In this document: positions 1,293 to 49,847 of the stretch, one piece after another
Position numbering within the stretch: the first letter of the stretch is position 1
Layout of the letters: each line of letters starts with the position of its first letter
Assembly (NCBI RefSeq): GCF_037042905.1
Contig: NC_087258.1
Coordinates: 20,088,001-20,152,000 of the forward strand
DNA length: 64,000 nucleotides
Direction: 5' to 3'
Source of the DNA: Lytechinus pictus
Lineage: Eukaryota
Made by a program: the position numbers and the translations under genes
The notes under the pieces: generated by a model
What the model was told of the DNA's origin: nothing
The model's input: only the letters and a program-made list of their open reading frames with translations
Databases searched by the model: none

Positions 1293-2264
1293 TTAGCGAA
1301 CAAACTTGTTAGATGCATCCCGAAATATTTTGAGGAAGGCTTGGCGAAACTCTTTGTCTCTATGATGGTATATAAAGGGATTGAGTGCAGCAGCGACAGC
1401 CACTTCAAACAGGAAAACGAGATTCAGATACACCATGAAATCATCATCTGCTAACGCTGTTACTTGTAGACTGAAAAATAGGATATACGGATACCAAAGG
1501 AATACAAGGACAGCGACTATGATCCCGGTTGTCTTGGCCGCTTTGAGCCTGCGCCCGATCTCTTCCCGTTCAACGCGGTTGTTCTGACCGCTTCTTAATT
1601 CATTTTCTATCGCTCTTGCTTGCTTGACAGCAATGCGCATTATGAGGAGATTTGAAGTGACCAACAGCAGCAGCGTAATGATCAGGAAAGTGACGATGAA
1701 CCACGTGTGGATTACGAACCCAAGGTTATGACGCTGCGCTCTTGCACCGCCGACAGCTTTCGGAATTCCACAGACTTCTATGTAACTGCAGATTGCGGCA
1801 TCACTCAAGCAGATTGTCCAAATGGATGCTACGACGTAGCCCGCGCGTTTATTGGTCACCAACGTGGGGTATTGAAGCGGTTTTGTTACGGCGATATACC
1901 GATCTACCGTCAACGCGACAATGTGGAGCATTGTACTTCCAGATAACATGAACAGCGGTATCCGTAGCAATTGCGCCGTAGAAGGAAACCACGGATACAT
2001 CCCGAAAGCCATTGGGTATGAATCCAGCGCAACTGCCACGCTTGTAACCATATCATTCACTGCCAGACTTGACAATATGAAGTTTGTCGGAGTTCGGAGA
2101 TTGTAGTTCTTGTAAACGGCCATCACGACAAACAAGTTTCCAATTAATATGAATGGTGCGAGCACGGCAGAAACTGTTAACATCAACGCAAAGGAAATTC
2201 CATTTTCCTGCGAGTATTGGTTGTTGGTGAAATTCATCATGTCTAACTCATTTTTTTTAATCAT
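1293..2264 (-). CDS. Intronless rhodopsin-class (class A) GPCR, divergent from the tandem cluster
   Basis: 323-aa ORF with seven hydrophobic segments, GN (TM1), LRTPTN, LAVND (TM2), DRY (TM3), W-x-P (TM6), NPFIY (TM7) and helix-8 EFRQAF. N-terminal sequon NFT. The true start may be the MMNFT methionines. Confidence 0.93.
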   Translation of the reverse strand: MIKKNELDMMNFTNNQYSQENGISFALMLTVSAVLAPFILIGNLFVVMAVYKNYNLRTPTNFILSSLAVNDMVTSVAVALDSYPMAFGMYPWFPSTAQLLRIPLFMLSGSTMLHIVALTVDRYIAVTKPLQYPTLVTNKRAGYVVASIWTICLSDAAICSYIEVCGIPKAVGGARAQRHNLGFVIHTWFIVTFLIITLLLLVTSNLLIMRIAVKQARAIENELRSGQNNRVEREEIGRRLKAAKTTGIIVAVLVFLWYPYILFFSLQVTALADDDFMVYLNLVFLFEVAVAAALNPFIYHHRDKEFRQAFLKIFRDASNKFVR

Positions 2265-3637
2265 CTAATGACTTAAATCGTAGTTCAGATTATTCTTGTT
2301 CTTTTGCGAATTGTACTCGTATTAAGCCAAATCAATCTTGCGAAAGACCGTTACGATCTTCATCTGCGGATTTCATGGTTCTGATAGTAAAAAAGAAGGT
2401 CCACCGATTTTCGTTTTAAACTGACACTTTTTAAACACGTCGGCAGACTAGCGATATATCAGCGCCCACAGTAGTTCCTGCAGAAACTAGCAGTGTTGGT
2501 CTTAAACGAGCGTGTCCTGCCGCTGCAAAATCTGTTGTTTGATTATTTTGACGAATAATCAAAGAGCAAGCCAAATTGATGATCACTGATGGACGATTTT
2601 CGTCACACTCATCCTTTGGACCAAAAACAGTGTATTCGTCTTTGACGCGTCTTTCACACATTTCTCGCTATACCGTTACTCTGACAATTAATGATGTTTT
2701 ACCTGTCAGGAATATTTGATAGTGGCCTATTAATGGATTTTCATTAAGCAGGGCCTAATTGACAGATTGCAATCCACGCCACAATACATTCATGATGAAA
2801 CACAATATGCTTCGTACTCTCACCGTAAATCACAAAAGCTGGAAGTTGATCTTTGAGCTTGTGTTGTAAAATTGGAGCGTGTAGAACCAGAAATAATCAA
2901 AACATTCATTATGTTGTAATGCATATTATCATTCTTTTTGCGTTGCTTCTCTTTCCCTTTCATTACTTCGCCCACCTTCTAATATTTTTGAATATTTTCG
3001 TATTGTCTCACTTTTACATGTTTTTAATGTTCACGGACTTGCTGAAAAGCAGTCTGTTATGACTGAATGTAAGTTTTACCGTGATTAAATAAATACAATA
3101 CAATACAATACAATACCTTCGATCTCTGTTTTCTCACTATATTTTACTTCTTTCTTTTCGTTCTTACATGGTCTCTTTCATCCTTTCTCTTCAGATAGCT
3201 TTCAGCCGTATTTAATTTCACCCGTTTTGAATTCTTTGCCCTTATGGATAAATTATTTGCCAATTCCTTTTCATGTTGTATTGTAATACATACTTATTTC
3301 TATATCCTTCAATGTTTGATATTGTATAATTTATACACATTTAGTGTTTAATTAATACTTTATATTATTGTATATGTCCTGCCAGTGCTGAGTACAAATG
3401 TCTATGTTTTGAATTTGGATCTGAATCTGAGATCTCCAACTGGCGGCAAATATGTCTAGATGTTTTGCCATAAGAATAAATTAGTTATCTGATAATGAAA
3501 ATGCACCATGTCTACATCTTATGGAGATGACAGACGAATGCGCGACTTCCATGCATTTTTTAAAGCAAATGTACTACAAACAAAACTACACAATATACTT
3601 GTAAACGACACAGACTATTCAAGTGTAAAGGCTTTTT

Positions 3638-31007: not shown

Positions 31008-31135
31008 NNNNNNNNNNNNNNNNNNNNNNNNNNNNNNNNNNNNNNNNNNNNNNNNNNNNNNNNNNNNNNNNNNNNNNNNNNNNNNNNNNNNNNNNNNNNN
31101 NNNNNNNNNNNNNNNNNNNNNNNNNNNNNNNNNNN
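31008..31135. other. Assembly gap (N run)
   Basis: Run of N characters. Confidence 1.
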
Positions 31136-31173
31136 TTGTACCAAACGCTCTTGAGGTGTGAGTATGAAACATA

Positions 31174-31462
31174 ATGAGATGAGGCCCACTCAAAAGATGA
31201 CGCAGGACACCATTCTTAGCTTACTCAAAAGATGACGCAGGACACCATTCTTAGCTTACTCAAAATATGATGCAGGACACCATTCTTAGCTTAACTCAAA
31301 AGATGACGCAGGACACCATTCTTAGCTTAAACTCAAAAGATGACGCAGGACACCATTTTTAGCTTAAACTCAAAGGATGACGCAGGACACCATTCTTAGC
31401 TAAGAATGGTGTCATGCGTAAGCTAAGAATAGTGTCCTGCGTCATCTTTTGAGTTGGCTTCA

Positions 31463-31468
<6 letters not shown>
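31174..31468. repeat. 35-bp tandem array closing into a palindrome (duplicated at 31867-32161)
   Basis: Six direct copies of ACTCAAAAGATGACGCAGGACACCATTCTTAGCTT start at 31188, 31223, 31258, 31294, 31331 and 31368. One partial and one full inverted copy follow. The array is bracketed by TGAGATGAGGCC / GGCTTCATCTCA. Confidence 0.95.
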
Positions 31469-31537
<69 letters not shown>

Positions 31538-31538
<1 letters not shown>

Positions 31539-31617
31539 CAAAATACAATGTGAATAAAACAACCGTAGAGAGAAAACTTAGATCAAATTTTCGCCCATAG
31601 GGCTTCGTCAGGAAATC
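31538..31617 (-). ncRNA. 80-bp (TA)n-flanked module with a hammerhead ribozyme-like core
   Basis: Minus strand CUGACGA-A-GCCC-UAU-GGGC-GAAA (31589-31611). Stems I and III are imperfect. A second copy is at 41116-41197. Confidence 0.55.
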
Positions 31618-31741
31618 ATATATATATATATATATATATATATTGTAAAGAAATGGATGAAGAGAACAATGGTAGGCGTAGCTTAAATCAAGGTTCCCCA
31701 GAGCTATCTACCCTTTGGAAAAATTGGTGATGCCGAAAAAA

Positions 31742-31813
31742 TGTCTCTGCCGGGAATCGAACCCGGGCCCCCAGCTTTGATCGCCGGTGCCTTAACCACT
31801 AGACCACAGAGAC
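31742..31813 (-). tRNA. tRNA-like cloverleaf, anticodon TCA, within a repeat (probable tRNA-derived mobile module or pseudo-tRNA)
   Basis: Perfect 7-bp acceptor GTCTCTG/CAGAGAC, D-stem GTCT/AGGC, anticodon stem CCGGC/GCTGG with loop GA-TCA-AA, T-arm CCGGG-TTCGATT-CCCGG, then T6. A33 is non-canonical in this copy. Confidence 0.65.
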
Positions 31814-32155
31814 GGGTTACTTGTTTACTTGTACCAAACGCTCTTGAGGTGTGAGTATGAAACATAATGAGATGAGGCCCACTCAAAAGATGACGCAGGA
31901 CACCATTCTTAGCTTACTCAAAAGATGACGCAGGACACCATTCTTAGCTTACTCAAAATATGATGCAGGACACCATTCTTAGCTTAACTCAAAAGATGAC
32001 GCAGGACACCATTCTTAGCTTAAACTCAAAAGATGACGCAGGACACCATTTTTAGCTTAAACTCAAAGGATGACGCAGGACACCATTCTTAGCTAAGAAT
32101 GGTGTCATGCGTAAGCTAAGAATAGTGTCCTGCGTCATCTTTTGAGTTGGCTTCA

Positions 32156-32200
<45 letters not shown>

Positions 32201-34662: not shown

Positions 34663-37554
34663 TAATAATCCATTCGCACACTCTCGAGGCTTATTGTACA
34701 ATATCACATCGGGTTATGTTGTCCAGTCGGACAATCGCGTAATCCGCATATTGCAGAAAAGGGCTCCCTAAATTCCCGAATGTCAGGTCCTGTTTACCCG
34801 GCCCTTTGTGAAAATCATCAGTCAAGTATACGAATGTTCGGGTTCAATTTACCCGATGTTTTGTGAAAATTGTAATAATAATAATGATAATAATAATAAA
34901 AATACTCAATTTTTATATAGCACAAATTACAGCTAAGTCTCTTAGCGCTCTAAAAGTTAGTATAAGAAAGAAAGATGGAGAGAGAAAGAAAAAGAAAAAC
35001 ACTCATATTGAACCTAAATACACCATTAAAAATAACCTTAAAACATCATTATACACTATTTGAGACTGAATTTTGAGGATTTTGAACTAAATAATGCACC
35101 ATTAGGAAATTTGAATTTATCTTTGGAAAAGGTAACGCTTTAACATAAATATAAAAAGATCAAGATGAGGGACTAAGAATATTGAAATGCCCTTTGCCCA
35201 TGTGACATTTTATTTACATTTAGTGGAATGAACATCTTTCTGTTAGTTCAAGGTAGTTACCTAACTGGGTGATACTCATTGAGAAGCTGTTGTAAGTATT
35301 AAGGGACCACTTTATGCTGACATTTAAAAGCAATTACAAGAAGTTTAAAAATCAATCTTTCACTGATAACCAATATAAGCTGCAAAGTATAGGAGAAACT
35401 GATTCTCGAGACCGTCTTTAGTGACAACCCTGGCAGCAGACATATCTTGTTCATATGACAAGACATTGTCAATTGACTATCAATCATAAACCCTATAGGT
35501 TCCTAGCACACTTTGCCGGTTAGAGATTGGATTGATTGGAAGAGACAGGAGGAAGAAAACTTCTTGTTCGATGACGGGAAGACAGGTGAAGAAGTTAAGT
35601 TTTTCCTTCATTGATTGAAAGTCTATTTGCAGATGACCAGGGGCGGATCCAGGATTTTCCAAAAGGGCGGGGGCAAATTTTGTGGAGGAAAATTTTGACA
35701 AGCCAAAAAAAAAAGTTTTCACCCACAAATTAAGGATATTTCGTACCCGCAAAACAATTGACAAGCACAAAAAAAGTCTTCAATTTCAAAGGGGGGGGGG
35801 GGCACACCTCGGTTTTTCTTCTCAAAGGGGGGGGGGGGGCACGTGCACCCCTCCCTGGATCTGCGCCTGCAGATGACCATGCCGATATTTCCTGCCGGCA
35901 CACTCTAGTTTAGCCATCACATTCAATCGGTCATTACGATTAACTACGGCATACAGTCGAGTGTCGTCAGCATGCATATTCAGCGTGACCAAATCCGTGT
36001 GCCCTGATGATATATTCGAAGGGTGAGAAATACATCGTAAAAACAATGGGGCCCAACGCTGAGCCTTGCGGCACACCTCGTAGCAGTACTTGCCTGGAAG
36101 ATTTCTTTTCTTCAATGACAGAAAGAAGACTGAAAACGGCCGATGATGTATGATTCAATCCAATTAAAAGCAACACCAGTGAATTCAAATATGCTGCGCA
36201 GCCGACGGAGAAGGATACTATGAGATAAATTGTCATGTCACATATATACAAAGGGTCGGGTAAACTGGACCAAACAAAGTTATTGAATTTTAAAGATGTG
36301 CATTATTCCGGTGAAACAGTTTTAGGCTTGTCCTAATGAAAATTCATTAAGTGTGCTGATTATGTCATATCCCCACTTGTTCTCTTGTTTTTTTATTATA
36401 TGAAATTAGGTATATTCAGATATTTTCTACCAAGAACTAAAACAATTGAATTAACAACAGACTAAGTGCGATAGTTATTTCCTGCTGAAACTTATTTCAT
36501 CATAATGGAGACACATCGTTCATACATTTATGAAAACATGAAACAATTATGATTTCATGTAATAACATAAGAAAAAGGAAAGTGGGGATGTGACATCATC
36601 AGCACACCTAATGAATATTCATGAAGACATGCCTAGAACTGTTTCACCTGAATAATGCAAATCTTTAAGAATTCAATAACTTAGTTATTTGTTATCCGAT
36701 TTAGATGAAATTTTCAGCATTTTGCTCTGTTAATTTTACTCTATGTATTCAGATATAAATATTTTCAGCCCGGAGTATCCTTTATTCTTGCAATGTAATA
36801 TAAAAACATGTTTGTAGGCCTACATTAACGTCAAATAAAATTGTAAACATAGATTATTAGGCTTATATGATTTGTTATGTGTATAATGTGAAATGGAAAG
36901 AATCATATAAAACAGTCTTTAGAAAAAGGTGCATAATGCATATTCTCGTCCTTTTTGCCTTGCTTCTCTCTCTTTTTCCTTCCAGCTATTTCTCTTTCCC
37001 TCACTTTCCCTTTCTTTACTTCGCCCACCTTCAATCTCTAATTTCTGTCTATATTTGACTTCTCTCTTTTCGCTCTTATACGTTGTCTCTTTAATCCTTT
37101 CTCTTCATATAACTTAAAGCCGTATTTTATTTCACCCGTTTTTCATTCTTTGCCTTTATGGGTAAATTATTTGCCAATTCCTTTTCATGTTGCATTGTTA
37201 TACATACTTATTTCTATTTCCTTCAATGTTTAATAATTCATACGCCTTTATAGTGTTTCCTTAATACTTTATATTATTGTGTATGTCCTGCCAGCACTGA
37301 GGACAAATGTCTATGTTTTAAATTTGGATCAATAAATGAATCTGAGACCTCCAACTGACGGTAAAAATGTGTAGATGTATTGCCATGAGAATGAATTACA
37401 GTACTTATATCTGATATTTAAAGTCACCATGTCTACATCTTATGGAGATGACAGACGAATGCACGATTTCCATGCATTTTTAAAGCAAAGTACACAGTAT
37501 ACTTGTAAACATGGTAGAGGACACAGACTATTCAAGTATATAGGCTTTAAAAAC

Positions 37555-37596
<42 letters not shown>

Positions 37597-38599
37597 GCAA
37601 TTGAGATACACACCTGAAAGTTGACCCTGAGTCAACCGACTTGAAGTCAATTTACTCAGAGTCATGTTCAGGACTTAGAATTTTTTTGAGCTCAGAGAGT
37701 GTACTGCGGGCGGCAACGGAGTGCTATATCACGATTGCAGTTTCTTTCAGTTGATTTTTCTAACATGTTGTCTGTTTTCTTCATAACTGTTCAACTGGTT
37801 TGAGTTATTGCTTGGTTATTCATCTCTATTTGCGTTTCCTGTATTAATCATAATGCCTTAATAACAAAATAATGAGTCTAGATTTGTCATTGTAATGTTC
37901 CACGCAGAGCGATTAATGTGGGGGTTGTGGTCGCTTATTAGAACAGCCACTATACGTACGTGCATAGACCTACTGCGTACTCTGCGGAGCGAGAGCCGAT
38001 TTTGAGTAATTGTGTAGTCTTATTCCAGGAATAAATAAATAAGTAAAATAATAATTATAACAATGCTCTAAAATTTTTTGGTTTTGTTTTTGTTGTTCAA
38101 ACTGTGGTGTGATATTATGGTTCGACGCTTATTTTCCAAGATTCGTCAATTTTGACATCCAATAAAGTGTACTGACATGGCGTAGGCCTACTTCTGGTAG
38201 GGTTTGTGTCTTTGTGGGGCGCGCTGCTGTTCCCCCATCCCCCCCCCCCATCCCCCATATTTTCTTCAAAAGGTTTGTGTGTGTATGTGTGTGAGTGTGT
38301 GTGTGTGTGTTTGTGTGCCAACCACTGGGCGTACTCCCCCTGTTCGGCGGCCAAAAAAAAAAGAAAAGAAAAGAAAATTAACTCAATCGTATAAAGTATA
38401 GATATCAAAGTAGACAATCAATAGACAAAATAAATATCAAAATAGACAAATTCGAAATAGACGATGAAGGTCCTTATACTTTTTCGTAAAGGGTGTATAT
38501 TTGTCTCCCAAATGTTATTAGGTAATCTTTATTATCCAACAAGAGATAGAATACGGAAACAAATAGAATTCTTGGGAAAAAAAAGTCACATCTTTACTC

Positions 38600-38825
38600 T
38601 TGTAATTATTCTGTAATTTTAGGAAGGGATTTCAATATAATTCTAAATGAGTCTTTTGATTACATGGGACCTAAAACTCACTCACAGACTAGGTTTTCAA
38701 GTAGCTTGGACCTGTTTCTTAAGAAATGTGATTTGTCAGATATATGGAGGAAAAGAAACCCAAGCAGGAAACAATACACTTTTAGGCAAAAGAGCCCACC
38801 AGTACAAACACACTTAGATTATAGG
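38600..38825 (+). pseudogene. L1/Tx1-type LINE endonuclease fragment inside the TIR element
   Basis: Translates VILGRDFN...DLSDIWRKRNPSRKQYTFRQKSPPVQTHLDY, matching the APE motifs GDFN / D.WR..NP....YT / RLDY. Confidence 0.7.
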
Positions 38826-39049
38826 TTTGAATCTCATCATCAAACAAAAACAAAATGGCATGAGGTAGTATGATACATGTCAGGCTAAATTAAATGTCTC
38901 TAGACGTAATGTACTTAAATGAAAACTCATTTAGTTAGCCATAACCTCAAATTAAGTTAATACTACCCAAATAAACCTCAAGTCATCTTACAAAACCATG
39001 TCATCACTCTCAGTCGATTATAAGTCGATTATAACAGGTTGTTTTATTT

Positions 39050-39930
39050 TCAGTTTTATGCAAAACATAATATGAACTGCCTCCCCCCACCAAAAAAAAA
39101 TTACCTAGACAGGATATGGAATATGGTAATGTTTACTAGACATGAAAATCCATCAAGGGAGCCTTAACAACTTCAAGTAAAGTAAGTACTACAAGGTACT
39201 AAAAAAGAAAATACATACAAAAATGTATACATTAAGACATGGACAGGATATTGGAATAAAGTAATGTTATCTAGTCCTGAAAATCCACAAAGTGAGCCAT
39301 AATAACTTCAGGTAAGGTAAATACCACCTTTATTGACCTCAGGTAAGCAACATAAAACATATCATTACTTTGATTCGATTTTAATAAGGTATATAGTCAC
39401 ACGGCAGAGGTTGTTTTATTTTCAGCTTCCTGCTAAAGTAAGATACCAACTGCTCTACCCCCCCAAAAAAAATTATATTAAGATATGGACAGGATATTGG
39501 AATAAGGTAATCTTATCTATTCCTGAAAATCCACAAAGTGAGCCATAATAACTTGAGGTAAGATGAACACCACCATTATTGACCTCAAGTCAGCAAACTA
39601 AAACATATCATCACTTTGAGTCGATTTTAATGAGGGATATCTTACTTTAGATACTTTATATATTTTAGGTCAGTTTCACGCTAAAGTAAGATACCAACTG
39701 CTCCACCCCCCAAAAAAAAAATTATATTAAGATATGGACAGGATATTGGAATAAGGTAATCTTATCTATTCCTGAAAATCCACAAAGAGAGTCATAACAA
39801 CTTGAGGTAAGATGAACACCACCATTATTGACCTCAAGTCCGCTAAGTAAAACATATCACTTTGAATCGATTATATTAAGGGATATAAGGTAATGTAATC
39901 TATTCCTGAAAATCCAGAAAGAGAGTCATA
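39050..39930. repeat. Degenerate ~250-bp tandem repeats inside the TIR element
   Basis: GGACAGGATATTGGAATAA.GTAAT.TTATCTA.TCCTGAAAATCCACAAAG recurs at ~39241, ~39487 and ~39737. Confidence 0.75.
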
Positions 39931-41079
39931 ACAACACACAGTCCCATTCGCACGAAATCGCGTGGGCATTGCTGCGTTAAGTCTCCATGCTGCAGAACTA
40001 CTGGCGAGGAATGTGCGTCATTAAATATCAACCCCCCCCCAAATAAAAAATAAATAAATAAATAAATGAATAAATGGGAAAAAATAGTATGAGTAGGTAT
40101 GATACGTGGATGTCGGACATGCCGGGATAAATTAAATGTCTCTAGACAATGTACACACATGAAAACCATAAAGTGACCCAAAACTTCAAGTAAAGTTAAT
40201 ACTACCCACAAAACCCTCAAGTCATCTAATAAAAAAACATGTCATCACTTTTAGTCAGTTACATGAAGGAATATAATCACACGACTGAGGTTGTTTTATA
40301 AACAGTTTTATGCAAAATCATGGTATCAATTCCCCCCCCCCCCCCCGCTGGAAAAAAAAAGTAATAGACAGGGTATGGGATGAGGTATGTTATCTAAACA
40401 TGAAAATCCATCAAGTTAGCATTAAAAGCATGGAAATAAGTACATCTCATTTTAACACACGTGTTTATAATACAAACAGAACATACACCCCCCCCCACAC
40501 ACACACACACACACAAACTCAATGATGGCACACACACAGATGTATACACAAACACATACACACACAGACACAAACACATACACCCTGACAGACACACAGG
40601 CACATGCACACACACAAACTTTAAGTTTACGTTTTGGAGTAAATATGGGGTAACTGCAGCCCTGAAAACCCTACTAATCTAGGCCTCAGTACACTTAATT
40701 GGATGTAATCCAAATTGAATTGAATGAACAAATATTTTGGTGATTAATCTTGGAACCATATTATTCAACTACAAAAAAAAATCAAAATTTTACTCTTTTT
40801 TTTTCTTAGTTATTTATTCGTTCCTGGAATAAGACTACACTATTTCACAAAATCAGCTCTCGCTCCGCAGAACACACATCAGGTCTATGAATGTACGTAG
40901 TGGCTGTTCTAATAAGCGATCACACCCCCAACTGTGTTTCCCATCGTGAAAGCACTCCATTGCCGCCCGTAGTACACTCTCCGAGCTCAAAAAAATTTCT
41001 AAGTTCTGAACATGACCCTGAGTCAATGACTTCAAGTCGGTTGACTCAGGGTCGACTTTCAGGTGTGAATCTCCATTGC

Positions 41080-41115
<36 letters not shown>

Positions 41116-41117
<2 letters not shown>

Positions 41118-41197
41118 ACAAAATACAAGGTGAATAAAACAACCGTAGAGAGAAAACTTAGATCAAATTTTCGCCCATAGGGCTTCATCAGGAAATC
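41116..41197 (-). ncRNA. Second 80-bp hammerhead-core module between (TA)n tracts
   Basis: Minus strand CUGAUGA-A-GCCC-UAU-GGGC-GAAA (41169-41191); near-identical to 31538-31617. Confidence 0.55.
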
Positions 41198-41404
41198 ATA
41201 TATATATATATAGTGGATACGCAGATAGCCTGTCCTACACGAATGACCAACCAAGACGGAAAAGAAAAGAAAAAACAGGCAGCGTAATATTATCTGGTTT
41301 AACCCACCATTCAGCAAGAACGTATCAACCAATATCGGCTGCATCTTCTTAAAGCTGGTCGACAAACACTTCCCAAAGAAATCCAAACTCAATCGCATCT
41401 TTAA

Positions 41405-41987
41405 AGGAGAATGAAACCCTTGAAACCAGCTGAATCCATATCAAAGAGAAAAATCAAAGGAACACATTGTTGAAAGTTTGAGGAAGATTGAATGAATAAT
41501 AAGAAAGTTATGAGCATTTGAATATTGAGATCACTAGTGCCATGTAGATCCTCCCATTGGCAATGCGACCAAGATCTGTGATGTCACACACGTACAACTC
41601 TCCCATTTGGACACTGAAAATATACCCCAAAACATTTCTTTTTGCTCATTCTAATCATATGACAAACGATTCATCAATGATATAATGTTGTGAAACCTCT
41701 GTACTTGTCATCTCATAAAGAGAACACCTCACCTTGTGATAGACTCTATAAAAGTGAGAATATAAATGAAATAAGTACTAAAGTAATGAGGGAGTTGTAC
41801 GTGTGTGATATCACAGATCTTGGTCGCATTGCCGATGGGAGGATCTACATGGCACTAGTGATCTCAATATTCAAATGCTCATAACTTTCTTATTATTCAT
41901 TCAATCTTCCTCAAACTTTCAACAATGTGTTCCTTTGATTTTTCTCTTTGATATGGATTCAGCTGGTTTCAAGGGTTTCATTCTCCT
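41405..41987. mobile_element. Kolobok-like MITE, TTAA TSD, ~200-bp TIRs
   Basis: TTAA-AGGAGAATGAAACCCTTGAAACCAGC...GCTGGTTTCAAGGGTTTCATTCTCCT-TTAA. Excision restores R-I-F-N-R-N of the Penelope ORF. Confidence 0.92.
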
Positions 41988-42219
41988 TTAATAGAAACAC
42001 GCTCAAAGTGAGTTACAGCTGCATGCCGAACGTCGCCAGCATCATCAAAACTCACAACAAGCAAGCCCTGAAGGTAGACAATAAGTCAAACAGCAAAACA
42101 TGCAACTGCCGGAAAAAAGACCTCTGCCCTCTCCAAAGGAATTGCTTGGCTACCAACGTCATCTACAACGCGGAAGTAACAACCCCAGACAAGAGGATGA
42201 CCAACATTGGCCTCACGGA

Positions 42220-42779
42220 CCCGGGGGGGGGGGGGCCACTTACATTGACGAGTGGATACCATGCGCGACCCCAAAAACACGTAAAAAGGATGTCTTTTTC
42301 AAGATAGGGCACGTTACGTACGTAACGTGATAAGGGTGTCAAAAACACAAAAATAATGAAAAAAGGGTATCTATATATTTCGCTAGGAAAGTTACGTGTT
42401 TAGGGTCAAATTAGCGGGGATGATAAAACAAAATTAAAATGTTTTATAAAAGATGTCCTTTTTGCCCAAACACTACGTGTTTAGAGTCCGATTTGCGCGA
42501 GGTGTGGAAGTGGGATCGTACTAAACCAAATAAAAACCGACGACCTAAGGACCCGTGACATAACAATAAAATATTCCTGTACTTGTTTAGGGGCTCATTT
42601 CAGGGAATATTTGCCAAGGGTATGGTTTTGTTCCCAATACTTGTTAAGGGTAGGATTTCACACGCCAATACCTCTTTAGGGGTGCATTTTCAGAATATGG
42701 AAATTACGTGTTTAGGGTGCTTTTCGAGACCCCATGGTCGCGCATGGTATCCACTCGTCAATGGAAGTGGCCCCCCGGG
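42220..42779. mobile_element. MITE with CCCGGG termini and 8-bp TSD
   Basis: TIR CCCGGG(G)nCCACTT.CATTGACGAGTGGATACCATGCGCGACC; TSD CTCACGGA (42212-42219 and 42780-42787). Excision restores I-G-L-T-E. Confidence 0.92.
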
Positions 42780-43411
42780 CTCACGGAGCCCCCCTTCAAG
42801 TCCACATACTATAACCACCTCCAATCCTTCCGACACGAACGGTACCAGAACAGCACGGAACTGTCGAAGTTCATCTGGGACCTGAAACGATGCGACACGC
42901 CTTATACCATCAAGTGGTCCATCGCCAGCCATGCGCAAGCATACTCCAACGAGACAAAGAGATGTGACCTGTGCCTCACCGAAAAACGTCTCATTATGAA
43001 CGCTGATAAACTGCTGAACAAACGCCCAGAACTCGTTTCGAAATGCCGCCACCAAAACAAGTTCAAGTTATGCAATTTCAAAGACAATCTTCCGTAATCA
43101 CCATGCACGCACATCGTATAATGCAGTGACATCACCAATACTAGTGATGCAGCCTTTGTAGGCATAATTTTCATTTTCACTTTCATTATTATAAATTCTA
43201 TGGCATCTCATCTTATTATCGATTAATCGATCAACCACCCATCGCGGAGTATCGATTATTTGAAAAACATTTGAAAAACATTCAAATCATAAAAACCTCA
43301 GCGCGCACTGGTTACCTAGTTTCCTGCGCCCAGTATGTGCGTGTTTGGTGTAACGCGCTCCGCGCGATCGCGACATGCGCGCACTGTTCAATGGTATTGA
43401 AAAGTTTTATC

Positions 43412-43465
43412 AGTTGCCTGAAGATCGCACCTCACGTAGGTTGCGTGAAACTCAGAGTTGCAATT
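43412..43465 (+). ncRNA. Type I minimal hammerhead ribozyme in the Penelope 3' end
   Basis: Stem I AGUUGC/GCAAUU; core CUGAAGA; stem II CGCACCU/AGGUUGCG; GAAA; short stem III ACUC-A-GAGU; cleavage triplet GUU (43457-43459). Confidence 0.8.
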
Positions 43466-45040
43466 AAATTTGATGAACCTCCAGTCAACCTTGTGAACTT
43501 GTGTTTATTATATATATATATATATACATGTATATACAATGTACAATCACACAAATGTAAATGATACAGTTCCTTTCTTTTAGTTATATGGTTGATTATT
43601 CTCACATTGGTTATTCATGTCAATTTTCCGTTGAGTCATATGCATGCTAAACATTCAGTGATCGAGACTCTTTCATCGGGGATAGCTGGGATCATGAGGT
43701 GGAGAAGAGAGTGAGATAGAGACAGGAAGAGAGAGTGCATGAGAGGGAGAGGTAGGCAAGAAAGAAAAGAGAAAAGGGGTAAAACCTATTTGAAATTAGT
43801 AGTCAGATTAAAATTAAATCCGGTAAGAATCGTTCATTGTTTAAACATGGTTCAATTCGACACGTCTAGACTTCATCACGAACTATTCTTCATCACGAAC
43901 TCAGTAATAAAGATCGATTCTGCTGAGTGCACTTGTCACGCCATTACCAGTAGGCGCTAGCCAATTCATTTGTTTCTATGCCATTCTTCTCCCGTCTACC
44001 ACTTATACGGTACCACGCCTCTTTGATTCCTTTTGGCCTTGCTTGTCCTTCTGTATCGACATCATATTTTCTTCATCTCGACGTATTGCTATTGTTCTGA
44101 TCAAGCAGCTTGAAATGGAAAAGCCTGTGTGACTTTGGAGATTATTTGAGACAATCAAACACGAGCAGACTTTGATATTTAAAAATTGTCAAGATCAAAC
44201 GCTATACAAATTAATATCGTCATGAAGCAGACTGTCTACAAAGTCGTGACAACTTTGCGATATTACCCAGTTTGATAAATTCTTCTCGAAGCTAGGTTAC
44301 CTGAGAACTTTATTCCCAACCGTAATGTTGCCTATACCATTCCAAACATGACAGATGTGCTAAACTTGCATGGGTCTCGCTGTACAGTGTCAATTATCGA
44401 CATTCCGTATTCAATTTAAACTTCTTATAGGAGAGTGGTAAATGGTGGACAATTCTGTTTCTGTTTATGGTAACTCCCGTAGAACTCGGCAGGACAGCGT
44501 TTTTGCTGGTTAACGCCAAGCTGGTATATAACCAATTACCTATGAAACATTTTACGTCTAGGTTAACCAGTCATAATGGCTGACCTCATAGACGACAGAT
44601 ATTACTCTCGGGCCTGTTTATAAAAGTGGAGACAATGGCAGAGTGGAGATTCGTACTCACAACCTTGCGATTATGAGTCCAATGCTCTTACTACTGGACC
44701 ACACAACCCGTGAATTGATTTCTAATGACATGTACAGCAGCGTAACTTGGAGAGCAAGCAAGCCATGTTATGCACAGCTAGACTGACAATCTTTACAGAA
44801 CACCAATGCATCTACACAACCAGAACAGTTACTGCTTCTCTTCTGGACACATTCTCATTCTGGTACCGGTATCAGTTCACCTGGTAAATAATGCCCTTCC
44901 ATTAAAGAAACACCATAGGAATCTTAAAACTGAGTTTATCGTCTGATCATTCTGCAATGAATATTGATGTCATAGTTTGACAGATGCAGGAAAGTCCGTA
45001 GAGGTCTTTACCATTAAATTCTGTAACGGGTGTCATCAAA

Positions 45041-46000
45041 ATGGGCGAAGTTATGGACCAAGCTGTTTTTGTTAATCACCAGTTTGCTGGCAAAATACTG
45101 ATGGCGTGCATTTCTCCACTTTTCCCATTCATCATCATCAGCAACGCATTATTGATTTTGATAGTTTACAGGAATCACAGCCTCCGTACACCAACGAATA
45201 CCATCGTTGCGAGTCTTGCCTTTTCAAGTTTCCTTGACGCCCTTGTCGGACTTCCGCTGAATACGTATGGAGTTGTATTTAAGATAGAAGAGGCGTGCAC
45301 AGGTGATGAAGATACTCTGTATTACTTGCCCCTGCAAATAATAGCAGGTGTTTCGTTTGGCCACATTGTAGCGTTGACTGCTGATCGATACATTGCTGTT
45401 ACAAAACCGTTACGCTATGTTCAGATAGTGACGCTGAGGCGCATTGCAATCGTATTGGGATTTTTCTGGATTCTCAGTACGTTGCTGAACAGCGTTCGAT
45501 ATGTTGGATTAAAACTTGAAACAAACTCGACAATCCTGGATAGCAATAAAACAATATGTGGTATGCCCTATTCTGGATCAACGACTTTAACCTTCGGATG
45601 GCTGCTTTTGTGGGTAATCATGGTCTTGATGGTCGCGCTACCTGTTATCAATATTTTGCTACTTCGCATTGCGATGAAGCAAGCGAGAAAAATTGCAATT
45701 CAGAGAGTGGTGATAGGTCTCCGCCAAGATCAACCTCTTGCTCAAAATGACCGGTTGAAGGCATTAAAAACAATATCGCTTGTTGTGTCACTCTTCGTAA
45801 TCTTCTGGTTTCCCTTTCCTCTGCATCTCGTTTGGCGGCTTACGACGTTCATGTCACCTCTAACATTTTCAGTATATAATCATTGCTTTCTTGTGTGGCA
45901 TACAATCAGTTTGATTGTTAATCCCATATTGTATGGTTTCAGGGATCGGGCTTTTCGAAGAGGCTTTCAAAATATCTTGCGTCAATGTAGGGCGCCGTAG
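45041..46000 (+). CDS. GPCR cluster copy 4 (intact, 319 aa)
   Basis: 7TM ORF, DRY, FWFP, NPILY. Confidence 0.94.
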   Translation: MGEVMDQAVFVNHQFAGKILMACISPLFPFIIISNALLILIVYRNHSLRTPTNTIVASLAFSSFLDALVGLPLNTYGVVFKIEEACTGDEDTLYYLPLQIIAGVSFGHIVALTADRYIAVTKPLRYVQIVTLRRIAIVLGFFWILSTLLNSVRYVGLKLETNSTILDSNKTICGMPYSGSTTLTFGWLLLWVIMVLMVALPVINILLLRIAMKQARKIAIQRVVIGLRQDQPLAQNDRLKALKTISLVVSLFVIFWFPFPLHLVWRLTTFMSPLTFSVYNHCFLVWHTISLIVNPILYGFRDRAFRRGFQNILRQCRAP

Positions 46001-47161: not shown

Positions 47162-49591
47162 GGGGGGGGGGGGGGGCACGTGCCCCCCCCCCCCCCCCTC
47201 TCCTGGATCCGCGCCTGCAGATGACCATGCCGATATTTCCTGCCGGCACACTCTAGTTTAGCCATCACATTCAATCGGTCATTACGATTAACTACGGCAT
47301 ATACAGCTGAGTGTCGTCAGCATACATATCTAGAGTGACCAAATCCGTGTGCCCTGATGATATATTCGAAGGGTGAGAAATACATCGTAAATACAATGGG
47401 GCCCAACGCTGAGCCTTGCGGCACACCTCGTATCAGTACTTGCCTGGAAGATTTCTTTTCTCCAATGACAGAAAGAAGACTGAAAACGGCCGATGATGTA
47501 TGATTCAATCCAATTAAAAGCAACACCAGTGAATTCAAATATGCTGCGCAGCCGACGGAGAAGGATACTTTATGATAAAATGTCATGTCACATATATACA
47601 AAGGGCCGTGTAAACTGGACCAAACCTTTCGGGAATTTAGGTGGCCTTTTTTCCTAATGGTTGGGTTACGCGATTGCCAGACGAGAAGGGATAACCCGAT
47701 GTGATGGCACAGGCCGGAACTCAAAGTTATTTAGTTGTATGAGCTTATTTCATACTTATAAATTGCAAAAACACTTCGTGTCTTCAAGTTTGGTGTTCTT
47801 GCAAGATACTAACTTTGATGACAAGCATCCTTTCATCGTGTACCTTGTAAAGATGGTTCTTTTGTAGAACCTATAAATCATGTTCCAGAGTGTCTTATAC
47901 CACTTTCAGAACTCGCTGGTCCGGACCAGCTCTGGGCTAAGTCGGAAATTTAGAGTTTATGAAAGGCGTGGTCTAAACTAATCCGCGTCGGGAATGGGCT
48001 ATCAAGGTGCTGCTTTTATCAACACCAGACCAGCGCCATCCCTTTTCTGCCCTGGTATTTGAATGGTTGATCATAAAAGTAGCGCTACTCTGCCGTATAG
48101 TTACTGAACGCTCGTGGTGCGGACTATTTTCGACACTATACCAATTATAATTTCCTTTGTCGGGTGAAGGTGGGTTTCGAACAATGACAAAAGAGTTGCC
48201 AAAGCTGTTGTACATGTATACCTTTACACATTTGTATACTTTCTCCCATACGTGTACTGTATCAAAGCAATAGCTTTGATCCAGCTGAAGCATGGCGGCT
48301 TGTCATTGTTCGAAACCCAACTTCACCCGACAAAGCGGAAATTATAATTGGTTTAGTGTCGAAAATCTGTCTATCTGACGGGGGGGGGGGGGGCACGTGC
48401 CCCCCCCCCCCTCCTGGATCCGCGCCTGCAGATGACCATGCCGATATTTCCTGCCGGCACACTCTAGTTTAGCCATCACATTCAATCGGTCATTACGATT
48501 AACTACGGCATATACAGCTTAGTGTCGTCAGCATACATATTTAGAGTGACCAAATCCGTGTGCCCTGATGATATATTCGAAGGGTGAGAAATACATCGTA
48601 AATACATTGGGGCCCAACGCTGAGCCTTGCGGCACACCTCGTATCAGTACTTGCCTGGAAGATTTCTTTTCTCCAATGACAGAAAGAAGACTGAAAACGG
48701 CCGATGATGTATGATTCAATCCAATTAAAAGCAACACCAGTGAATTCAAATATGCTGCGCAGCCGACGGAGAAGGATACTTTGAGATAAAGTGTCATGTC
48801 ACATATATACAAAGGGCCGTGTAAACTGGACCAAACCTTTCGGGAATTTAGGTGGCCTTTTTTCCGAATGGTTGGGTTACGCGATTGCCAGACGAGAAGG
48901 GATAACCCGATGTGATGGCACAGGCCGGAACTCAAAGTTATTTAGTTGTATGAGCTTATTTCATACTTATAAATTGCAAAAACACTTCGTGTCTTCAAGT
49001 TTGGTGTTCTTGCAAGATACTAACTTTGATGACAAGCATCCTTTCATCGTGTACCTTGTAAAGATGGTTCTTTTGTAGAACCTATAAATCATGTTCCAGA
49101 GTGTCTTATACCACTTTCAGAACTCGCTGGTCCGGACCAGCTCTGGGCTAAGTCGGAAATTTAGAGTTTATGAAAGGCGTGGTCTAAACTAATCCGCGTC
49201 GGAAATGGGCTATCAAGGTGCTGCTTTTATCAACACCAGACCAGCGCCATCCCTTTTCTGCCCGGGTATTTGAATGGTTGATCATAAAAGTAGCGCTACT
49301 CTGCCGTATAGTTACTGAACGCTTGTGGTGCGGACTATTTTCGACACTATACCAATTATAATTTCCTTTGTCGGGTGAAGGTGGGTTTCGAACAATGACA
49401 AAAGAGTTGCCAAAGCTGTTGTACATGTATACCTTTACACATTTGTATACTTTCTCCCATACGTGTACTGTATCAAAGCAATAGCTTTGATCCAGCTGAA
49501 GCATGGCGGCTTGTCATTGTTCGAAACCCAACTTCACCTGACAAAGCGGAAATTATAATTGGTTTAGTGTCGAAAATCTGTCTATCTGACG
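47162..49591 (+). repeat. Near-identical tandem duplication, period 1211 bp
   Basis: The block from the poly-G of the hAT MITE to CTATCTGACG repeats. Paired ORFs 47317/48528 and 47973/49184 are offset by 1211. Confidence 0.93.
48126..48366. mobile_element. Small MITE-like inverted-repeat element (duplicate 49337-49577)
   Basis: ATTTTCGACACTATACCAATTATAATTTCC...TTTCGAACAATGACAA is mirrored by TTGTCATTGTTCGAAA...GGAAATTATAATTGGTTTAGTGTCGAAAAT (~65-bp arms). Confidence 0.7.
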
Positions 49592-49626
49592 ATCAATCAG
49601 ATCGGGGTCGCCCTAGCCACTAGCCC

Positions 49627-49698
49627 GTCTCTTTGGTCTAGTGGTTAAGGCACCGGCGTTCAAAGCTGGGGGCCCGGGTTCGATTCCCGGCAGAGACA
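49627..49698 (+). tRNA. tRNA-like cloverleaf, anticodon TCA (49660-49662), second copy
   Basis: Same fold as 31742-31813, loop GT-TCA-AA with canonical U33 and one acceptor mismatch at position 7. T6 terminator at 49699-49704, then the same ~95-nt tail ending in (TA)n. Confidence 0.65.
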
Positions 49699-49793
49699 TT
49701 TTTTCGGCGTCACCAATTTTTCCAAAGGGTAGATAACTCTGGGGAACCTTGATTTAAGCTACGCCTACCATTGTTCTCTTCATCCATTTCTTT

Positions 49794-49844
<51 letters not shown>

Positions 49845-49847
<3 letters not shown>

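What the first reader, a model, noticed from the sequence alone, without database searches (positions are those of the whole stretch)
31136..32198. Candidate Penelope-parasitic composite: palindromic array + UCA-tRNA + hammerhead module, all lodged in (TA)n
Seen: on the minus strand the order is fold-back 35-bp array, 72-nt cloverleaf, T6, ~95-nt tail, (TA)n, hammerhead core, (TA)n, then the array again (period 693 bp). The tRNA-like unit and the ribozyme core share a strand, there is no ORF, and every visible junction is (TA)n. Established: Penelope-like elements carry minimal hammerheads at their ends, some clades favour microsatellites, and animal non-LTR retrozymes are non-coding hammerhead-bearing tandem repeats thought to use Penelope machinery. 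Inference: this could be a non-autonomous RNA element combining a Pol III promoter/tRNA with ribozyme processing, mobilised by the kind of TA-associated Penelope element found 10 kb downstream. Caveats: the modules may be independent insertions in one hotspot (each also occurs without the other in this window), and the left copy abuts a gap.
Basis: partly seen in the sequence, partly recalled or inferred. Interest (0 to 1): 0.78.

Follow-up and report, generated by a model that had tools for sequence, protein, structure and literature searches.

The report
Three Penelope-type inserts, one TA hotspot
The supposed composite mobile element is really three unrelated short retro-insertions of the Penelope type that landed side by side in one (TA)n microsatellite of a sea-urchin genome, which is an ordinary outcome for elements that all aim at TA repeats.

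Summary
They do not form one element. Genome-wide, the three modules are separate repeat families with very different copy numbers, and the window's order and junctions occur nowhere else.

- **Hammerhead module:** the last 80 nt of a canonical Penelope-like element (PLE; RT plus C-terminal GIY-YIG). It carries a minimal-hammerhead motif. About 110 copies.
- **tRNA module:** the 3' 176 nt of a 405/406-bp tRNA(UCA)-bearing repeat. About 2,360 copies, some in long tandem arrays.
- **Array:** a head-to-head double copy of the 3' end of a ~0.7-kb non-coding family. About 260 3' ends. Longer copies carry a clean minimal hammerhead that the window copy lacks.

All three families insert in (TA)n. All show PLE insertion signatures: 5' truncation, inverted or partial-tandem pairs, and an optional one-sided tail at the 3' end.

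A recently duplicated copy of the same (TA)n site, 6 kb away, holds a different set of inserts.

The 693-bp period rests on two 100% identical array copies beside the N stretch. Public reads could not test it.

Earlier notes of this scan describe the tRNA repeat and solo PLE hammerhead tails on other DNA of this genome. Verdict: an ordinary insertion nest, low interest.

The parts
31009..31135 (.). N stretch (assembly gap or masked). Not read or filled.
Evidence: The table lists a match range that reaches 6 positions into it.
31136..31466 (-). Left copy of the 'array'. It is a head-to-head (fold-back) double copy of the 3' end of repeat family 2. Parts: visible part of the one-sided tail 31136-31173; long arm with six 35-37-bp units 31174-31401; short inverted arm 31402-31466.
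31467..31537 (.). (TA)35 microsatellite, the target tract.
31538..31617 (-). 5'-truncated copy (last 80 nt) of canonical Penelope-like element PLE-1, ending directly in (TA)n without the optional 36-nt tail.
31583..31613 (-). Minimal-hammerhead motif of PLE-1. Helix I is 2 bp. Then CUGACGA (31611-31605), unpaired A (31604), helix II GCCC/GGGC with loop UAU (31603-31593), GAAA (31592-31589), palindromic A-U, then U16.1 U17. The predicted cut lies between 31585 and 31584.
   Evidence: features as defined in PMC4209133
31618..31643 (.). (TA)13
31644..31819 (-). 3' 176 nt of the 405/406-bp tRNA-bearing repeat. Parts: 6 nt of leader 31814-31819; tRNA(UCA) 31742-31813, with a U33-to-A change not seen in the public contigs laid on it; T6 31736-31741; 92-nt tail 31644-31735.
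31820..31822 (-). 3-nt filler (AAG on the minus strand) between the cut-short family-2 tail and the tRNA unit. No (TA)n at this junction.
31823..32159 (-). Right copy of the family-2 fold-back. Parts: tail cut short at 44 of 55 nt, 31823-31866; long arm 31867-32094; short inverted arm 32095-32159.
32160..32198 (.). (TA)19, followed by the unique right flank.
41118..41197 (-). Second 80-nt PLE-1 3' end (97.5% identical), in the duplicated copy of the same (TA)n site.
41216..43510 (+). 5'-truncated copy of a second canonical PLE (PLE-2; C-terminal GIY-YIG part plus 3' UTR), flanked by (TA)n. Two nested MITEs interrupt it: 41401-41991 and about 42218-42787.
49330..49845 (+). Near-full tRNA-bearing unit (about 49400-49798) with an inverted 5'-truncated partner upstream and (TA)n downstream. 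No array or hammerhead beside it.

Best explanation
The region is an insertion nest, not an element. A (TA)n microsatellite is present in both copies of a recent segmental duplication in this window. Retroelements whose machinery targets TA repeats have hit it repeatedly. In this copy, three unrelated pieces lie in the same orientation.

1. A head-to-head double copy of the 3' end of a ~0.7-kb ORF-less, hammerhead-bearing family, with its terminal 35-37-nt unit locally expanded to six copies. This is the 'array'.
2. A 5'-truncated copy of a 405-bp tRNA(UCA)-bearing repeat.
3. The last 80 nt of a canonical Penelope-like element (RT plus C-terminal GIY-YIG), with its minimal-hammerhead motif.

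Shown here: each family has its own copy number and its own full-length form, and the families are not linked elsewhere in the genome. Also shown: each carries the structural signatures described for PLE insertions, namely (TA)n target, 5' truncation, inverted or partial-tandem pairs, and an optional tail at the 3' end.

Inferred: all three were reverse-transcribed onto nicked TA tracts by PLE RT/GIY-YIG proteins. The two ORF-less families would act as passengers. The direct array-tRNA joint with 3 filler bases may be a template switch during one such event.

The 693-bp period is a local duplication of the array copy. It is either an assembly error at a contig start or an unequal exchange between TA tracts. 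It does not mark a mobile unit.
For: **Independent families**
- The PLE-1 core has 110 copies at <=2 mismatches. The tRNA unit has 2,361. The family-2 3' end has 259.
- No other locus repeats the composite: 0/28 hammerhead loci, 0/29 tRNA loci and 0/28 array loci within +-1.5 kb.
- Four hammerhead loci hold tRNA-unit pieces, in mixed order and strand.
- The array-tRNA junction matches full-length only at the window itself.

**Identity of the hammerhead module**
- Homology runs upstream through a ~430-nt CT-rich UTR into a GIY-YIG ORF (Pfam PF01541, E 3.4e-5) and an RT-like ORF.

**Identity of the tRNA module**
- The unit is 405/406 bp: leader, tRNA, T6, tail. It forms tandem arrays, partial tandems with an upstream truncated copy, and head-to-head pairs, flanked by (TA)n in the copies read.

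**Identity of the array**
- Other copies are palindromic to the centre, with variable arm length. Solo 5'-truncated copies exist, and a 55-nt tail sits at one end only.

**Two alternative 3' ends in all three families**
- PLE-1: 14 with tail, 14 directly in (TA)n.
- tRNA repeat: 13 and 8.
- Family 2: 23 and 12.

**Same hotspot, other inserts**
- The duplicated site at 37513-43562 has the same flanks and the same PLE-1 end. Otherwise it holds a 3.5-kb inverted-termini element and a second PLE.
Against: - All three pieces share one strand. The chance of that for independent insertions is 1 in 4, so it carries little weight.
- The array-tRNA joint lacks (TA)n, so these two pieces may stem from one event.
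- The block [array-(TA)n-hammerhead-(TA)n-tRNA] is followed by a second identical array. That could be read as 1.5 tandem units.
- No autonomous partner was tied to the two ORF-less families by shared 3' sequence.
- PLE machinery is inferred from insertion architecture alone.
- My sample is about 30 loci per family, not the whole genome.
Confidence: 0.88

Rival explanations
1. One reading: one non-autonomous composite retroelement (array + Pol III tRNA + hammerhead), 693 bp per unit, mobilised as a whole by a TA-targeting Penelope element.
For: The modules share a strand. The array recurs at a 693-bp period. There is no ORF. PLE-type elements lie in the same window.
Against: No second copy of the arrangement or of its junctions exists in 811 Mb. 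Module copy numbers are 110, 2,361 and 259. Each module is a truncated end of its own longer family. Public contigs that leave the tRNA unit at 31819 continue into the family's own leader, not into the array.
Confidence: 0.03
2. Array and tRNA unit are one chimeric insertion. A PLE reverse transcriptase copying the tRNA-repeat RNA from the TA tract jumped, 6 nt upstream of the tRNA, onto a family-2 RNA within its tail. It then copied that RNA and folded back. This gives a one-off chimera, not a family. It is compatible with the best explanation.
For: The joint is direct, with 3 filler bases and no (TA)n. The family-2 tail is cut at 44 of 55 nt exactly at the joint. Both pieces share a strand.
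Against: Two successive insertions, or a deletion, would give the same picture. Template jumping by this enzyme was not tested. Only one such joint was seen.
Confidence: 0.3
3. The 'array' is a DNA-transposon MITE with terminal inverted repeats and a TA target-site duplication, unrelated to retroelements.
For: It has 47-54-nt inverted ends (I23-I25) and TA-rich flanks. Many copies are 250-800 bp.
Against: The copies are palindromic all the way to a variable centre, rather than TIRs around a unique core. Solo one-armed copies are truncated at different 5' points, up to ~700 nt. A 55-nt extension sits at one end only. A minimal hammerhead lies ~85 nt from the 3' end in longer copies.
Confidence: 0.05
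4. The second array copy, and hence the 693-bp period, is an assembly artefact at the start of a contig. The true locus has one array.
For: The left copy begins right after the N stretch. It is 100% identical over 331 bp, including a slippage-prone internal array. Fold-backs and long (TA)n tracts are known to cause assembly problems around PLE insertions (PMC8557442).
Against: Both copies lie on the same side of the N stretch, inside one contig, which is not the usual gap-flanking overlap. The (TA)n tracts after the two copies differ in length (35 and 19 repeats). Unequal exchange between TA tracts would give the same structure. No public run covered the unique flanks, so this stays untested.
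Confidence: 0.5

Closest known systems
Canonical EN+ Penelope-like elements (Neptune/Penelope-Poseidon type) with minimal hammerheads in their terminal repeats (Cervera & De la Pena 2014, PMC4209133; Craig et al. 2021, PMC8557442)
   Same: - RT-like ORF followed by a C-terminal GIY-YIG domain, preceded by a CX4CxxC motif.
- (TA)n target, 5'-truncated copies and head-to-head pairs.
- Optional 36-nt tail.
- CUGANGA...GAAA core with an extra base after A9, a G10.1-C11.1 pair and a palindromic 15.2-16.2 pair.
   Different: Helix I of the PLE-1 motif is only 2 bp. A 2-bp helix I has been reported, but only for the D. virilis variant. Helix II is 4 bp rather than the usual 6-8. The clade was not determined by phylogeny. 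Cleavage is untested.
Animal non-LTR retrozymes, i.e. non-autonomous PLE derivatives (PMC7229834; bioRxiv 10.64898/2026.07.22.740005)
   Same: These are short ORF-less repeats linked to PLE terminal regions. Family 2 has a clean minimal hammerhead. The tRNA repeat forms long head-to-tail arrays with a ~400-bp unit.
   Different: The 693-bp 'composite' is not a family at all. The tRNA repeat has no hammerhead. Family 2 was seen as fold-backs and solo copies, not as tandem arrays. No circular RNA evidence was obtained.
tRNA-derived SINEs
   Same: An intact tRNA cloverleaf with A and B boxes. A short, abundant retroposon with 5'-truncated copies.
   Different: The tRNA lies 229 nt inside the unit, not at its head. 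A T6 terminator follows it directly. The 3' end is (TA)n-associated, with a PLE-type tail, tandem units and inverted pairs instead of a LINE-derived tail.
Small-RNA-gene-bearing non-SINE retroelements (Cassandra, Helenus/Ajax; PMC10886601)
   Same: A small-RNA gene is carried inside a non-autonomous retroelement of another class.
   Different: Those are LTR-type elements. Here the insertion architecture is PLE-type. I took this only from the paper's title and abstract.

Membership tests
   Outside the window, 0/28 hammerhead, 0/29 tRNA and 0/28 array loci repeat it. The junction is unique.
   110, 2,361 and 259 copies
Penelope-like element, canonical EN+ (for the hammerhead module's family, PLE-1) | ORF with RT followed by a C-terminal GIY-YIG endonuclease | tested here: met
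   On the minus strand of L091: GIY-YIG ORF at 836-1411 (Pfam PF01541, E 3.4e-5, above the curated cutoff) and an RT-like ORF at 2027-3034. Pfam gave no hit for the latter. The nearest Atlas clusters are 'reverse transcriptase domain-containing', score 0.97. This copy is itself degenerate.
Penelope-like element, canonical EN+ (PLE-1) | Optional 30-40-bp tail at the insertion end | tested here: met
   Of 32 sampled 3' ends, 14 carry a 36-nt tail and 14 end directly in (TA)n. Definition from PMC11167929 and PMC8557442.
Penelope-like element, canonical EN+ (PLE-1) | Partial-tandem or inverted 5'-truncated insertion structures | tested here: met
   Head-to-head pairs in L003, L012, L015, L021 and L027/L028
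PLE minimal hammerhead (min-HHR, PMC4209133) | CUGANGA and GAAA boxes, an unpaired base between 9 and 10.1, a G10.1-C11.1 pair, and a palindromic 15.2-16.2 pair | tested here: met
   There are 2 sites in the window against 0.0 in 300 shuffles. Family 2 keeps the same architecture with a different helix II sequence (GUCUU/AAGAC).
PLE minimal hammerhead (min-HHR, PMC4209133) | Helix I of 4-5 bp | tested here: not met
   PLE-1 has only 2 bp (G-C, A-U). Family 2 has 4 bp. In full-length PLE-1 copies, my reading of the sequence (no fold was run) is that a 7-bp hairpin UUCAUCA/UGAUGAA could sequester the core.
PLE minimal hammerhead (min-HHR, PMC4209133) | Self-cleavage (as a dimer) | not testable with these tools
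   No assay was possible. Truncated genomic copies do not start at the predicted cut site.
Rfam hammerhead families | Match to a hammerhead covariance model | tested here: not met
   No hit at E<=10 in the window region or in full-length 3' ends. The control is uninformative: the clean family-2 motif is also missed.
Non-LTR retrozyme | Genomic tandem repeats, each unit carrying a type I hammerhead | tested here: not met
   The 693-bp block occurs once, as 1.5 units. The tRNA repeat is tandem but has no hammerhead.
tRNA-derived SINE (for the tRNA module) | Pol III tRNA-like head at the 5' end, with no terminator before the 3' end | tested here: not met
   The tRNA sits after a 229-nt leader and is followed at once by T6.
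tRNA-Sec (ARAGORN's label) | Extended acceptor/T arms and a long variable arm | tested here: not met
   A 72-nt standard cloverleaf aligned end to end with the general tRNA model. The label follows from the TCA anticodon only.
TIR DNA transposon / MITE (for the array) | Symmetric termini around a unique core, and no 5'-truncated solo copies | tested here: not met
   One-sided 55-nt tail, palindromy to a variable centre, and solo truncated copies

The most novel reading that the evidence does not exclude
The tRNA module belongs to a 405-bp, ~2,400-copy, hammerhead-free tandem retroelement with PLE-type insertion signatures. In it, an intact tRNA gene followed by T6 might do the job that the hammerhead does in retrozymes. 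RNase P/Z would cut multimeric transcripts to unit length, or Pol III would supply the transcript. A recurrent 5' truncation point in the anticodon loop (5 independent loci) would then reflect the RNA being handled as a tRNA. Earlier notes of this scan already describe this family on other DNA of the genome. Nothing here shows processing or decoding.
Probability: 0.12. Interest if true: 0.65.

Novelty: new member of a known kind. Interest (0 to 1): 0.22.

Why it matters
As proposed, the finding would have been a new class of chimeric RNA parasite. It is not one.

What remains is a clear example of how TA-targeting Penelope-type retroelements and their passengers pile up in one microsatellite. 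Such nests mimic composite elements and complicate both assembly and annotation.

The by-products have modest value for repeat annotation of this sea-urchin genome:
- a (TA)n-targeting canonical PLE with an atypically short-stemmed hammerhead motif;
- a 0.7-kb ORF-less hammerhead family;
- the abundant tRNA-bearing tandem repeat.

They also bear on the open question of what PLE hammerheads are for.

Tried and rejected
- **Rfam.** I scanned the whole window at gathering thresholds, the region at E<=10, full-length PLE-1 ends and family-2 loci. Only the tRNA matched; no hammerhead did. The miRNA-like hits are just the fold-back and (TA)n.
- **Public reads**. No run holds more than 18% of the sampled words. 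None covers the unique flanks, and the (TA)n-hammerhead stretch was skipped as repeat. So neither the 693-bp duplication nor any RNA spanning the junctions could be tested. One run guessed to be RNA has contigs over tRNA plus tail, but DNA carry-over cannot be excluded.
- **Looking for the autonomous partner** of the two ORF-less families. I aligned 3' ends plus tails of PLE-1, PLE-2, the tRNA repeat and family 2 locally. No score exceeded the shuffles.
- **Pfam** gave nothing for the RT piece of PLE-1 or for the three pieces of the window's PLE-2 ORF. I searched these pieces apart and never joined them. Their identity rests on the protein-atlas leads and on an 810-aa open frame in another genomic copy.
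- **tblastn** of the PLE-1 proteins found no PLE-1 coding sequence in the window.
- **Alternative hammerhead topologies** for PLE-1, considered by hand:
  - Type III, cut upstream: helix III is possible, but there is no helix I hairpin.
  - A distal helix I: not convincing.
- **Literature.** I found no paper describing a tRNA-bearing PLE-dependent repeat in sea urchins. Repbase and Dfam were not available.
- **The N stretch** was not read or filled.
Full report
**Observation.** The region reads as described. On the minus strand the order is:
- a fold-back of 35-37-bp units (Tandem Repeats Finder: period 37, 5.9 copies, plus a short inverted arm);
- a 72-nt cloverleaf with anticodon UCA (ARAGORN; Rfam tRNA 52.4 bits against a cutoff of 29);
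- T6 and a 92-nt tail;
- (TA)13;
- an 80-nt block holding CUGACGA-A-GCCC-UAU-GGGC-GAAA;
- (TA)35;
- the fold-back again.

The two fold-backs (31136-31466 and 31829-32159) are 100% identical and 693 bp apart. The left one starts right after the N stretch at 31009-31135. No ORF longer than 67 aa lies wholly within the real sequence. The joint between array and tRNA unit is not (TA)n: it is direct, with 3 bases in between (31820-31822).

**Are the modules one element?** I searched the window's own 811-Mb assembly with each module and examined about 30 loci per module, each with 1.5 kb of flank on both sides.
- None of the 28 other hammerhead loci holds the array, and 24 hold nothing else from the region. 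Four hold tRNA-unit pieces, in a different order and on either strand.
- None of the 29 other tRNA loci holds the hammerhead block or the array.
- None of the 28 other array loci holds the hammerhead block. One holds a 31-nt tRNA-tail fragment.
- Pattern counts over the whole assembly are 110 (hammerhead core, <=2 mismatches), 2,361 (tRNA-T6 joint, <=2) and 259 (array-family 3' end, <=3). The reversed-pattern controls give zero.
- A 101-nt probe across the array-tRNA joint matches in full only at the window itself. All other hits stop at the end of the array family.

Four of 28 hammerhead loci having a tRNA-unit piece within 3 kb is well above the roughly 0.2 expected from 2,361 copies in 811 Mb. 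That fits a shared target, not a shared element.

**The hammerhead block.** Flank alignment shows that the 80 nt are the 3' end of a longer element. Homology runs upstream through a ~430-nt CT-rich stretch into coding sequence. In a longer copy (L091), the minus strand carries two ORFs:
- a 191-aa ORF with a CX4CxxC motif and a GIY-YIG domain (Pfam PF01541, E 3.4e-5, above the curated cutoff);
- upstream of it, a 335-aa RT-like ORF. Pfam gave no hit. The nearest protein-atlas clusters are 'reverse transcriptase domain-containing' at 0.97.

This is the layout of a canonical EN+ Penelope-like element, called PLE-1 here. Copies end in (TA)n, are 5'-truncated at many points, and often sit in head-to-head pairs. 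Half of them carry an extra 36-nt tail after the usual end (14 with, 14 without, of 32).

Craig et al. describe (TA)n targets, inverted or partial-tandem insertions and a 30-40-bp tail for PLEs (PMC8557442). [quoted passage not shown]

**Is the motif a hammerhead?** Rfam gives no hammerhead hit at E<=10, either in the window or on full-length ends. Rfam also misses a textbook-clean minimal hammerhead in the array family, so this blank says nothing.

I then compared the motif with the minimal hammerhead that Cervera and De la Pena defined for PLEs (PMC4209133):
- Met: both core boxes, the extra base between A9 and G10.1, the G10.1-C11.1 pair, and a palindromic 15.2-16.2 pair (AAUU, which allows a dimer helix III).
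- Not met: helix I is only 2 bp, and helix II is 4 bp. A 2-bp helix I has been reported, but only for the Drosophila virilis Penelope variant.

My descriptor finds two sites in the 64-kb window, both PLE-1 ends, against none in 300 shuffles. In full-length copies, by my reading of the aligned sequence (no fold was run), a 7-bp hairpin UUCAUCA/UGAUGAA could lock up the core. I therefore call it a PLE minimal-hammerhead motif of uncertain activity. Cleavage was not testable, and the truncated copies do not begin at the predicted cut.

**The tRNA module.** The 176 nt are the 3' part of a 405/406-bp unit. The unit has a 229-nt leader with an internal inverted repeat, the tRNA, T6 and a ~95-nt tail. 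Its copies show these features:
- Units occur head to tail without spacer. One run of 43 or more units with a 406-bp period lies on contig 2.
- They occur as partial tandems with a truncated copy upstream of a full one (L033, L034, L041, L045, L049).
- They occur as head-to-head pairs (L036, L052).
- The outer 3' ends abut (TA)n, either directly or after the first ~49 nt of the next unit.

These are the PLE insertion signatures again, without any hammerhead core. The window copy is cut 6 nt upstream of the tRNA and has A instead of U at position 33. All public contigs that cover the site read the U form, so the A looks specific to this copy. ARAGORN's 'SeC' label reflects only the anticodon, because the fold is a standard 72-nt cloverleaf. 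Earlier notes of this scan describe the same 405-bp repeat, about 2,000 copies in (TA)n with PLE-like architecture. I re-derived those points independently here.

**The array.** Genome-wide matches cover only its two ends. Other copies are perfect palindromes up to a variable centre, with arms from ~50 to ~380 nt. Solo one-armed copies are truncated at different 5' points, up to ~700 nt, and have no ORF. A 55-nt extension sits at one end only.

Longer copies carry, ~85 nt from the 3' end, GCUU-CUGACGA-A-GUCUU-AUUA-AAGAC-GAAA-GC-UA|AAGC. This is a minimal hammerhead with a 4-bp helix I. The family is therefore a short non-coding hammerhead-bearing retroelement inserted in the PLE manner, not a TIR transposon. 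In the window copy the arms are too short to include the hammerhead, and the terminal 35-37-nt unit has been expanded to six copies.

**The hotspot.** The unique flanks of the site recur once in the window, at 37513-37540 and 43538-43562, within a segmental duplication about 1% diverged. That second site has the same 80-nt PLE-1 end on the same strand (97.5% identical), so this insert probably predates the duplication. Otherwise it holds:
- a 3.5-kb element with 89-nt inverted termini;
- a 5'-truncated second PLE. Its GIY-YIG-type C-terminal pieces were searched separately. The best genomic relative has an 810-aa open frame ending in this part. Two nested MITEs interrupt the window copy.

Within about 1% of sequence divergence, the two copies of the site acquired different passengers.

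**The 693-bp period.** Public runs hold only the repeat parts (<=18% of words) and none covers the unique flanks, so it could not be tested. Both copies lie in one contig on the same side of the N stretch, and the TA tracts after them differ in length (35 and 19 repeats). An assembly error at a contig start and an unequal exchange between TA tracts remain about equally likely. Neither would make the block a mobile unit. I did not read or fill the N stretch. The table lists a match range reaching 6 positions into it, which I did not follow up.

**Mechanism.**
- Shown: three separate families, their anatomy, their shared target, and their PLE-type insertion signatures.
- Inferred: PLE RT/GIY-YIG proteins nick TA tracts and prime reverse transcription of their own RNA and of passenger RNAs. 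Incomplete copying gives 5' truncation. Two start sites give the optional tail. Strand or template switches give inverted and tandem forms.
- The direct array-tRNA joint with three filler bases, exactly where the array family's tail is cut short, may be such a template switch. I put that at 0.3.
- No 3'-end similarity links the passengers to PLE-1 or PLE-2, so their partner is unknown.

**Verdict.** The region is an ordinary insertion nest made of new members of known kinds, so interest is low. The most novel reading still open concerns the tRNA repeat itself, not this locus.

Noticed in passing
L053, L054, L056, L057, L059, L052 (loci fetched): 5'-truncated copies of the 405-bp tRNA repeat start repeatedly in the anticodon loop (target repeat, then TCAAAGCTGGGGG) at five independent loci. 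One head-to-head joint lies at the same place. This could be an RT stop or an RNA cut at nt 33-34, or only microhomology with (TA)n/(AATC)n.
   Followed up: partly
window 37585-41083: A 3.5-kb element with 89-nt inverted termini (GCAGCAATTGAGATACACACCTGAAAG...) sits in the duplicated (TA)n site. The same terminus lies beside a PLE-1 end in L005, on another contig, as it does in the window itself (locus L002). It may be another TA-targeting family.
   Followed up: no
window 41401-41991 and about 42218-42787: Two MITEs are nested in the truncated PLE-2 copy. One has 207-bp inverted arms flanked by TTAA. The other has an 8-bp duplication, CTCACGGA.
   Followed up: no
G000 contig 2, 8866116-8883606: At least 43 consecutive tRNA(UCA) units at a 406-bp period, a satellite-like array of the tRNA-bearing repeat.
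   Followed up: no
window 31781: The window's tRNA copy has A at position 33 of the anticodon loop. Every public contig covering the site reads the U form. The copy at 49627-49698 keeps U33.
   Followed up: yes
window 12987-61654: The window is built of 9.3-12.3-kb segmental repeats (up to 7 copies, 95-99% identical) that carry ORFs such as 45041-46000 (319 aa). The gene family was not identified.
   Followed up: no
L066 1470-1515, L075 1470-1515: Rfam release 15 hammerhead models miss a clean PLE-type minimal hammerhead at E<=10. A blank from Rfam is therefore no evidence against such motifs in this genome.
   Followed up: yes
window 43400-43470: The 3' UTR of the PLE-2 copy holds CUGAAGA ... 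UGAAAC around an imperfect stem. It does not fit the minimal-hammerhead descriptor: 10.1-11.1 is C-G and there is an extra U before G12.
   Followed up: partly
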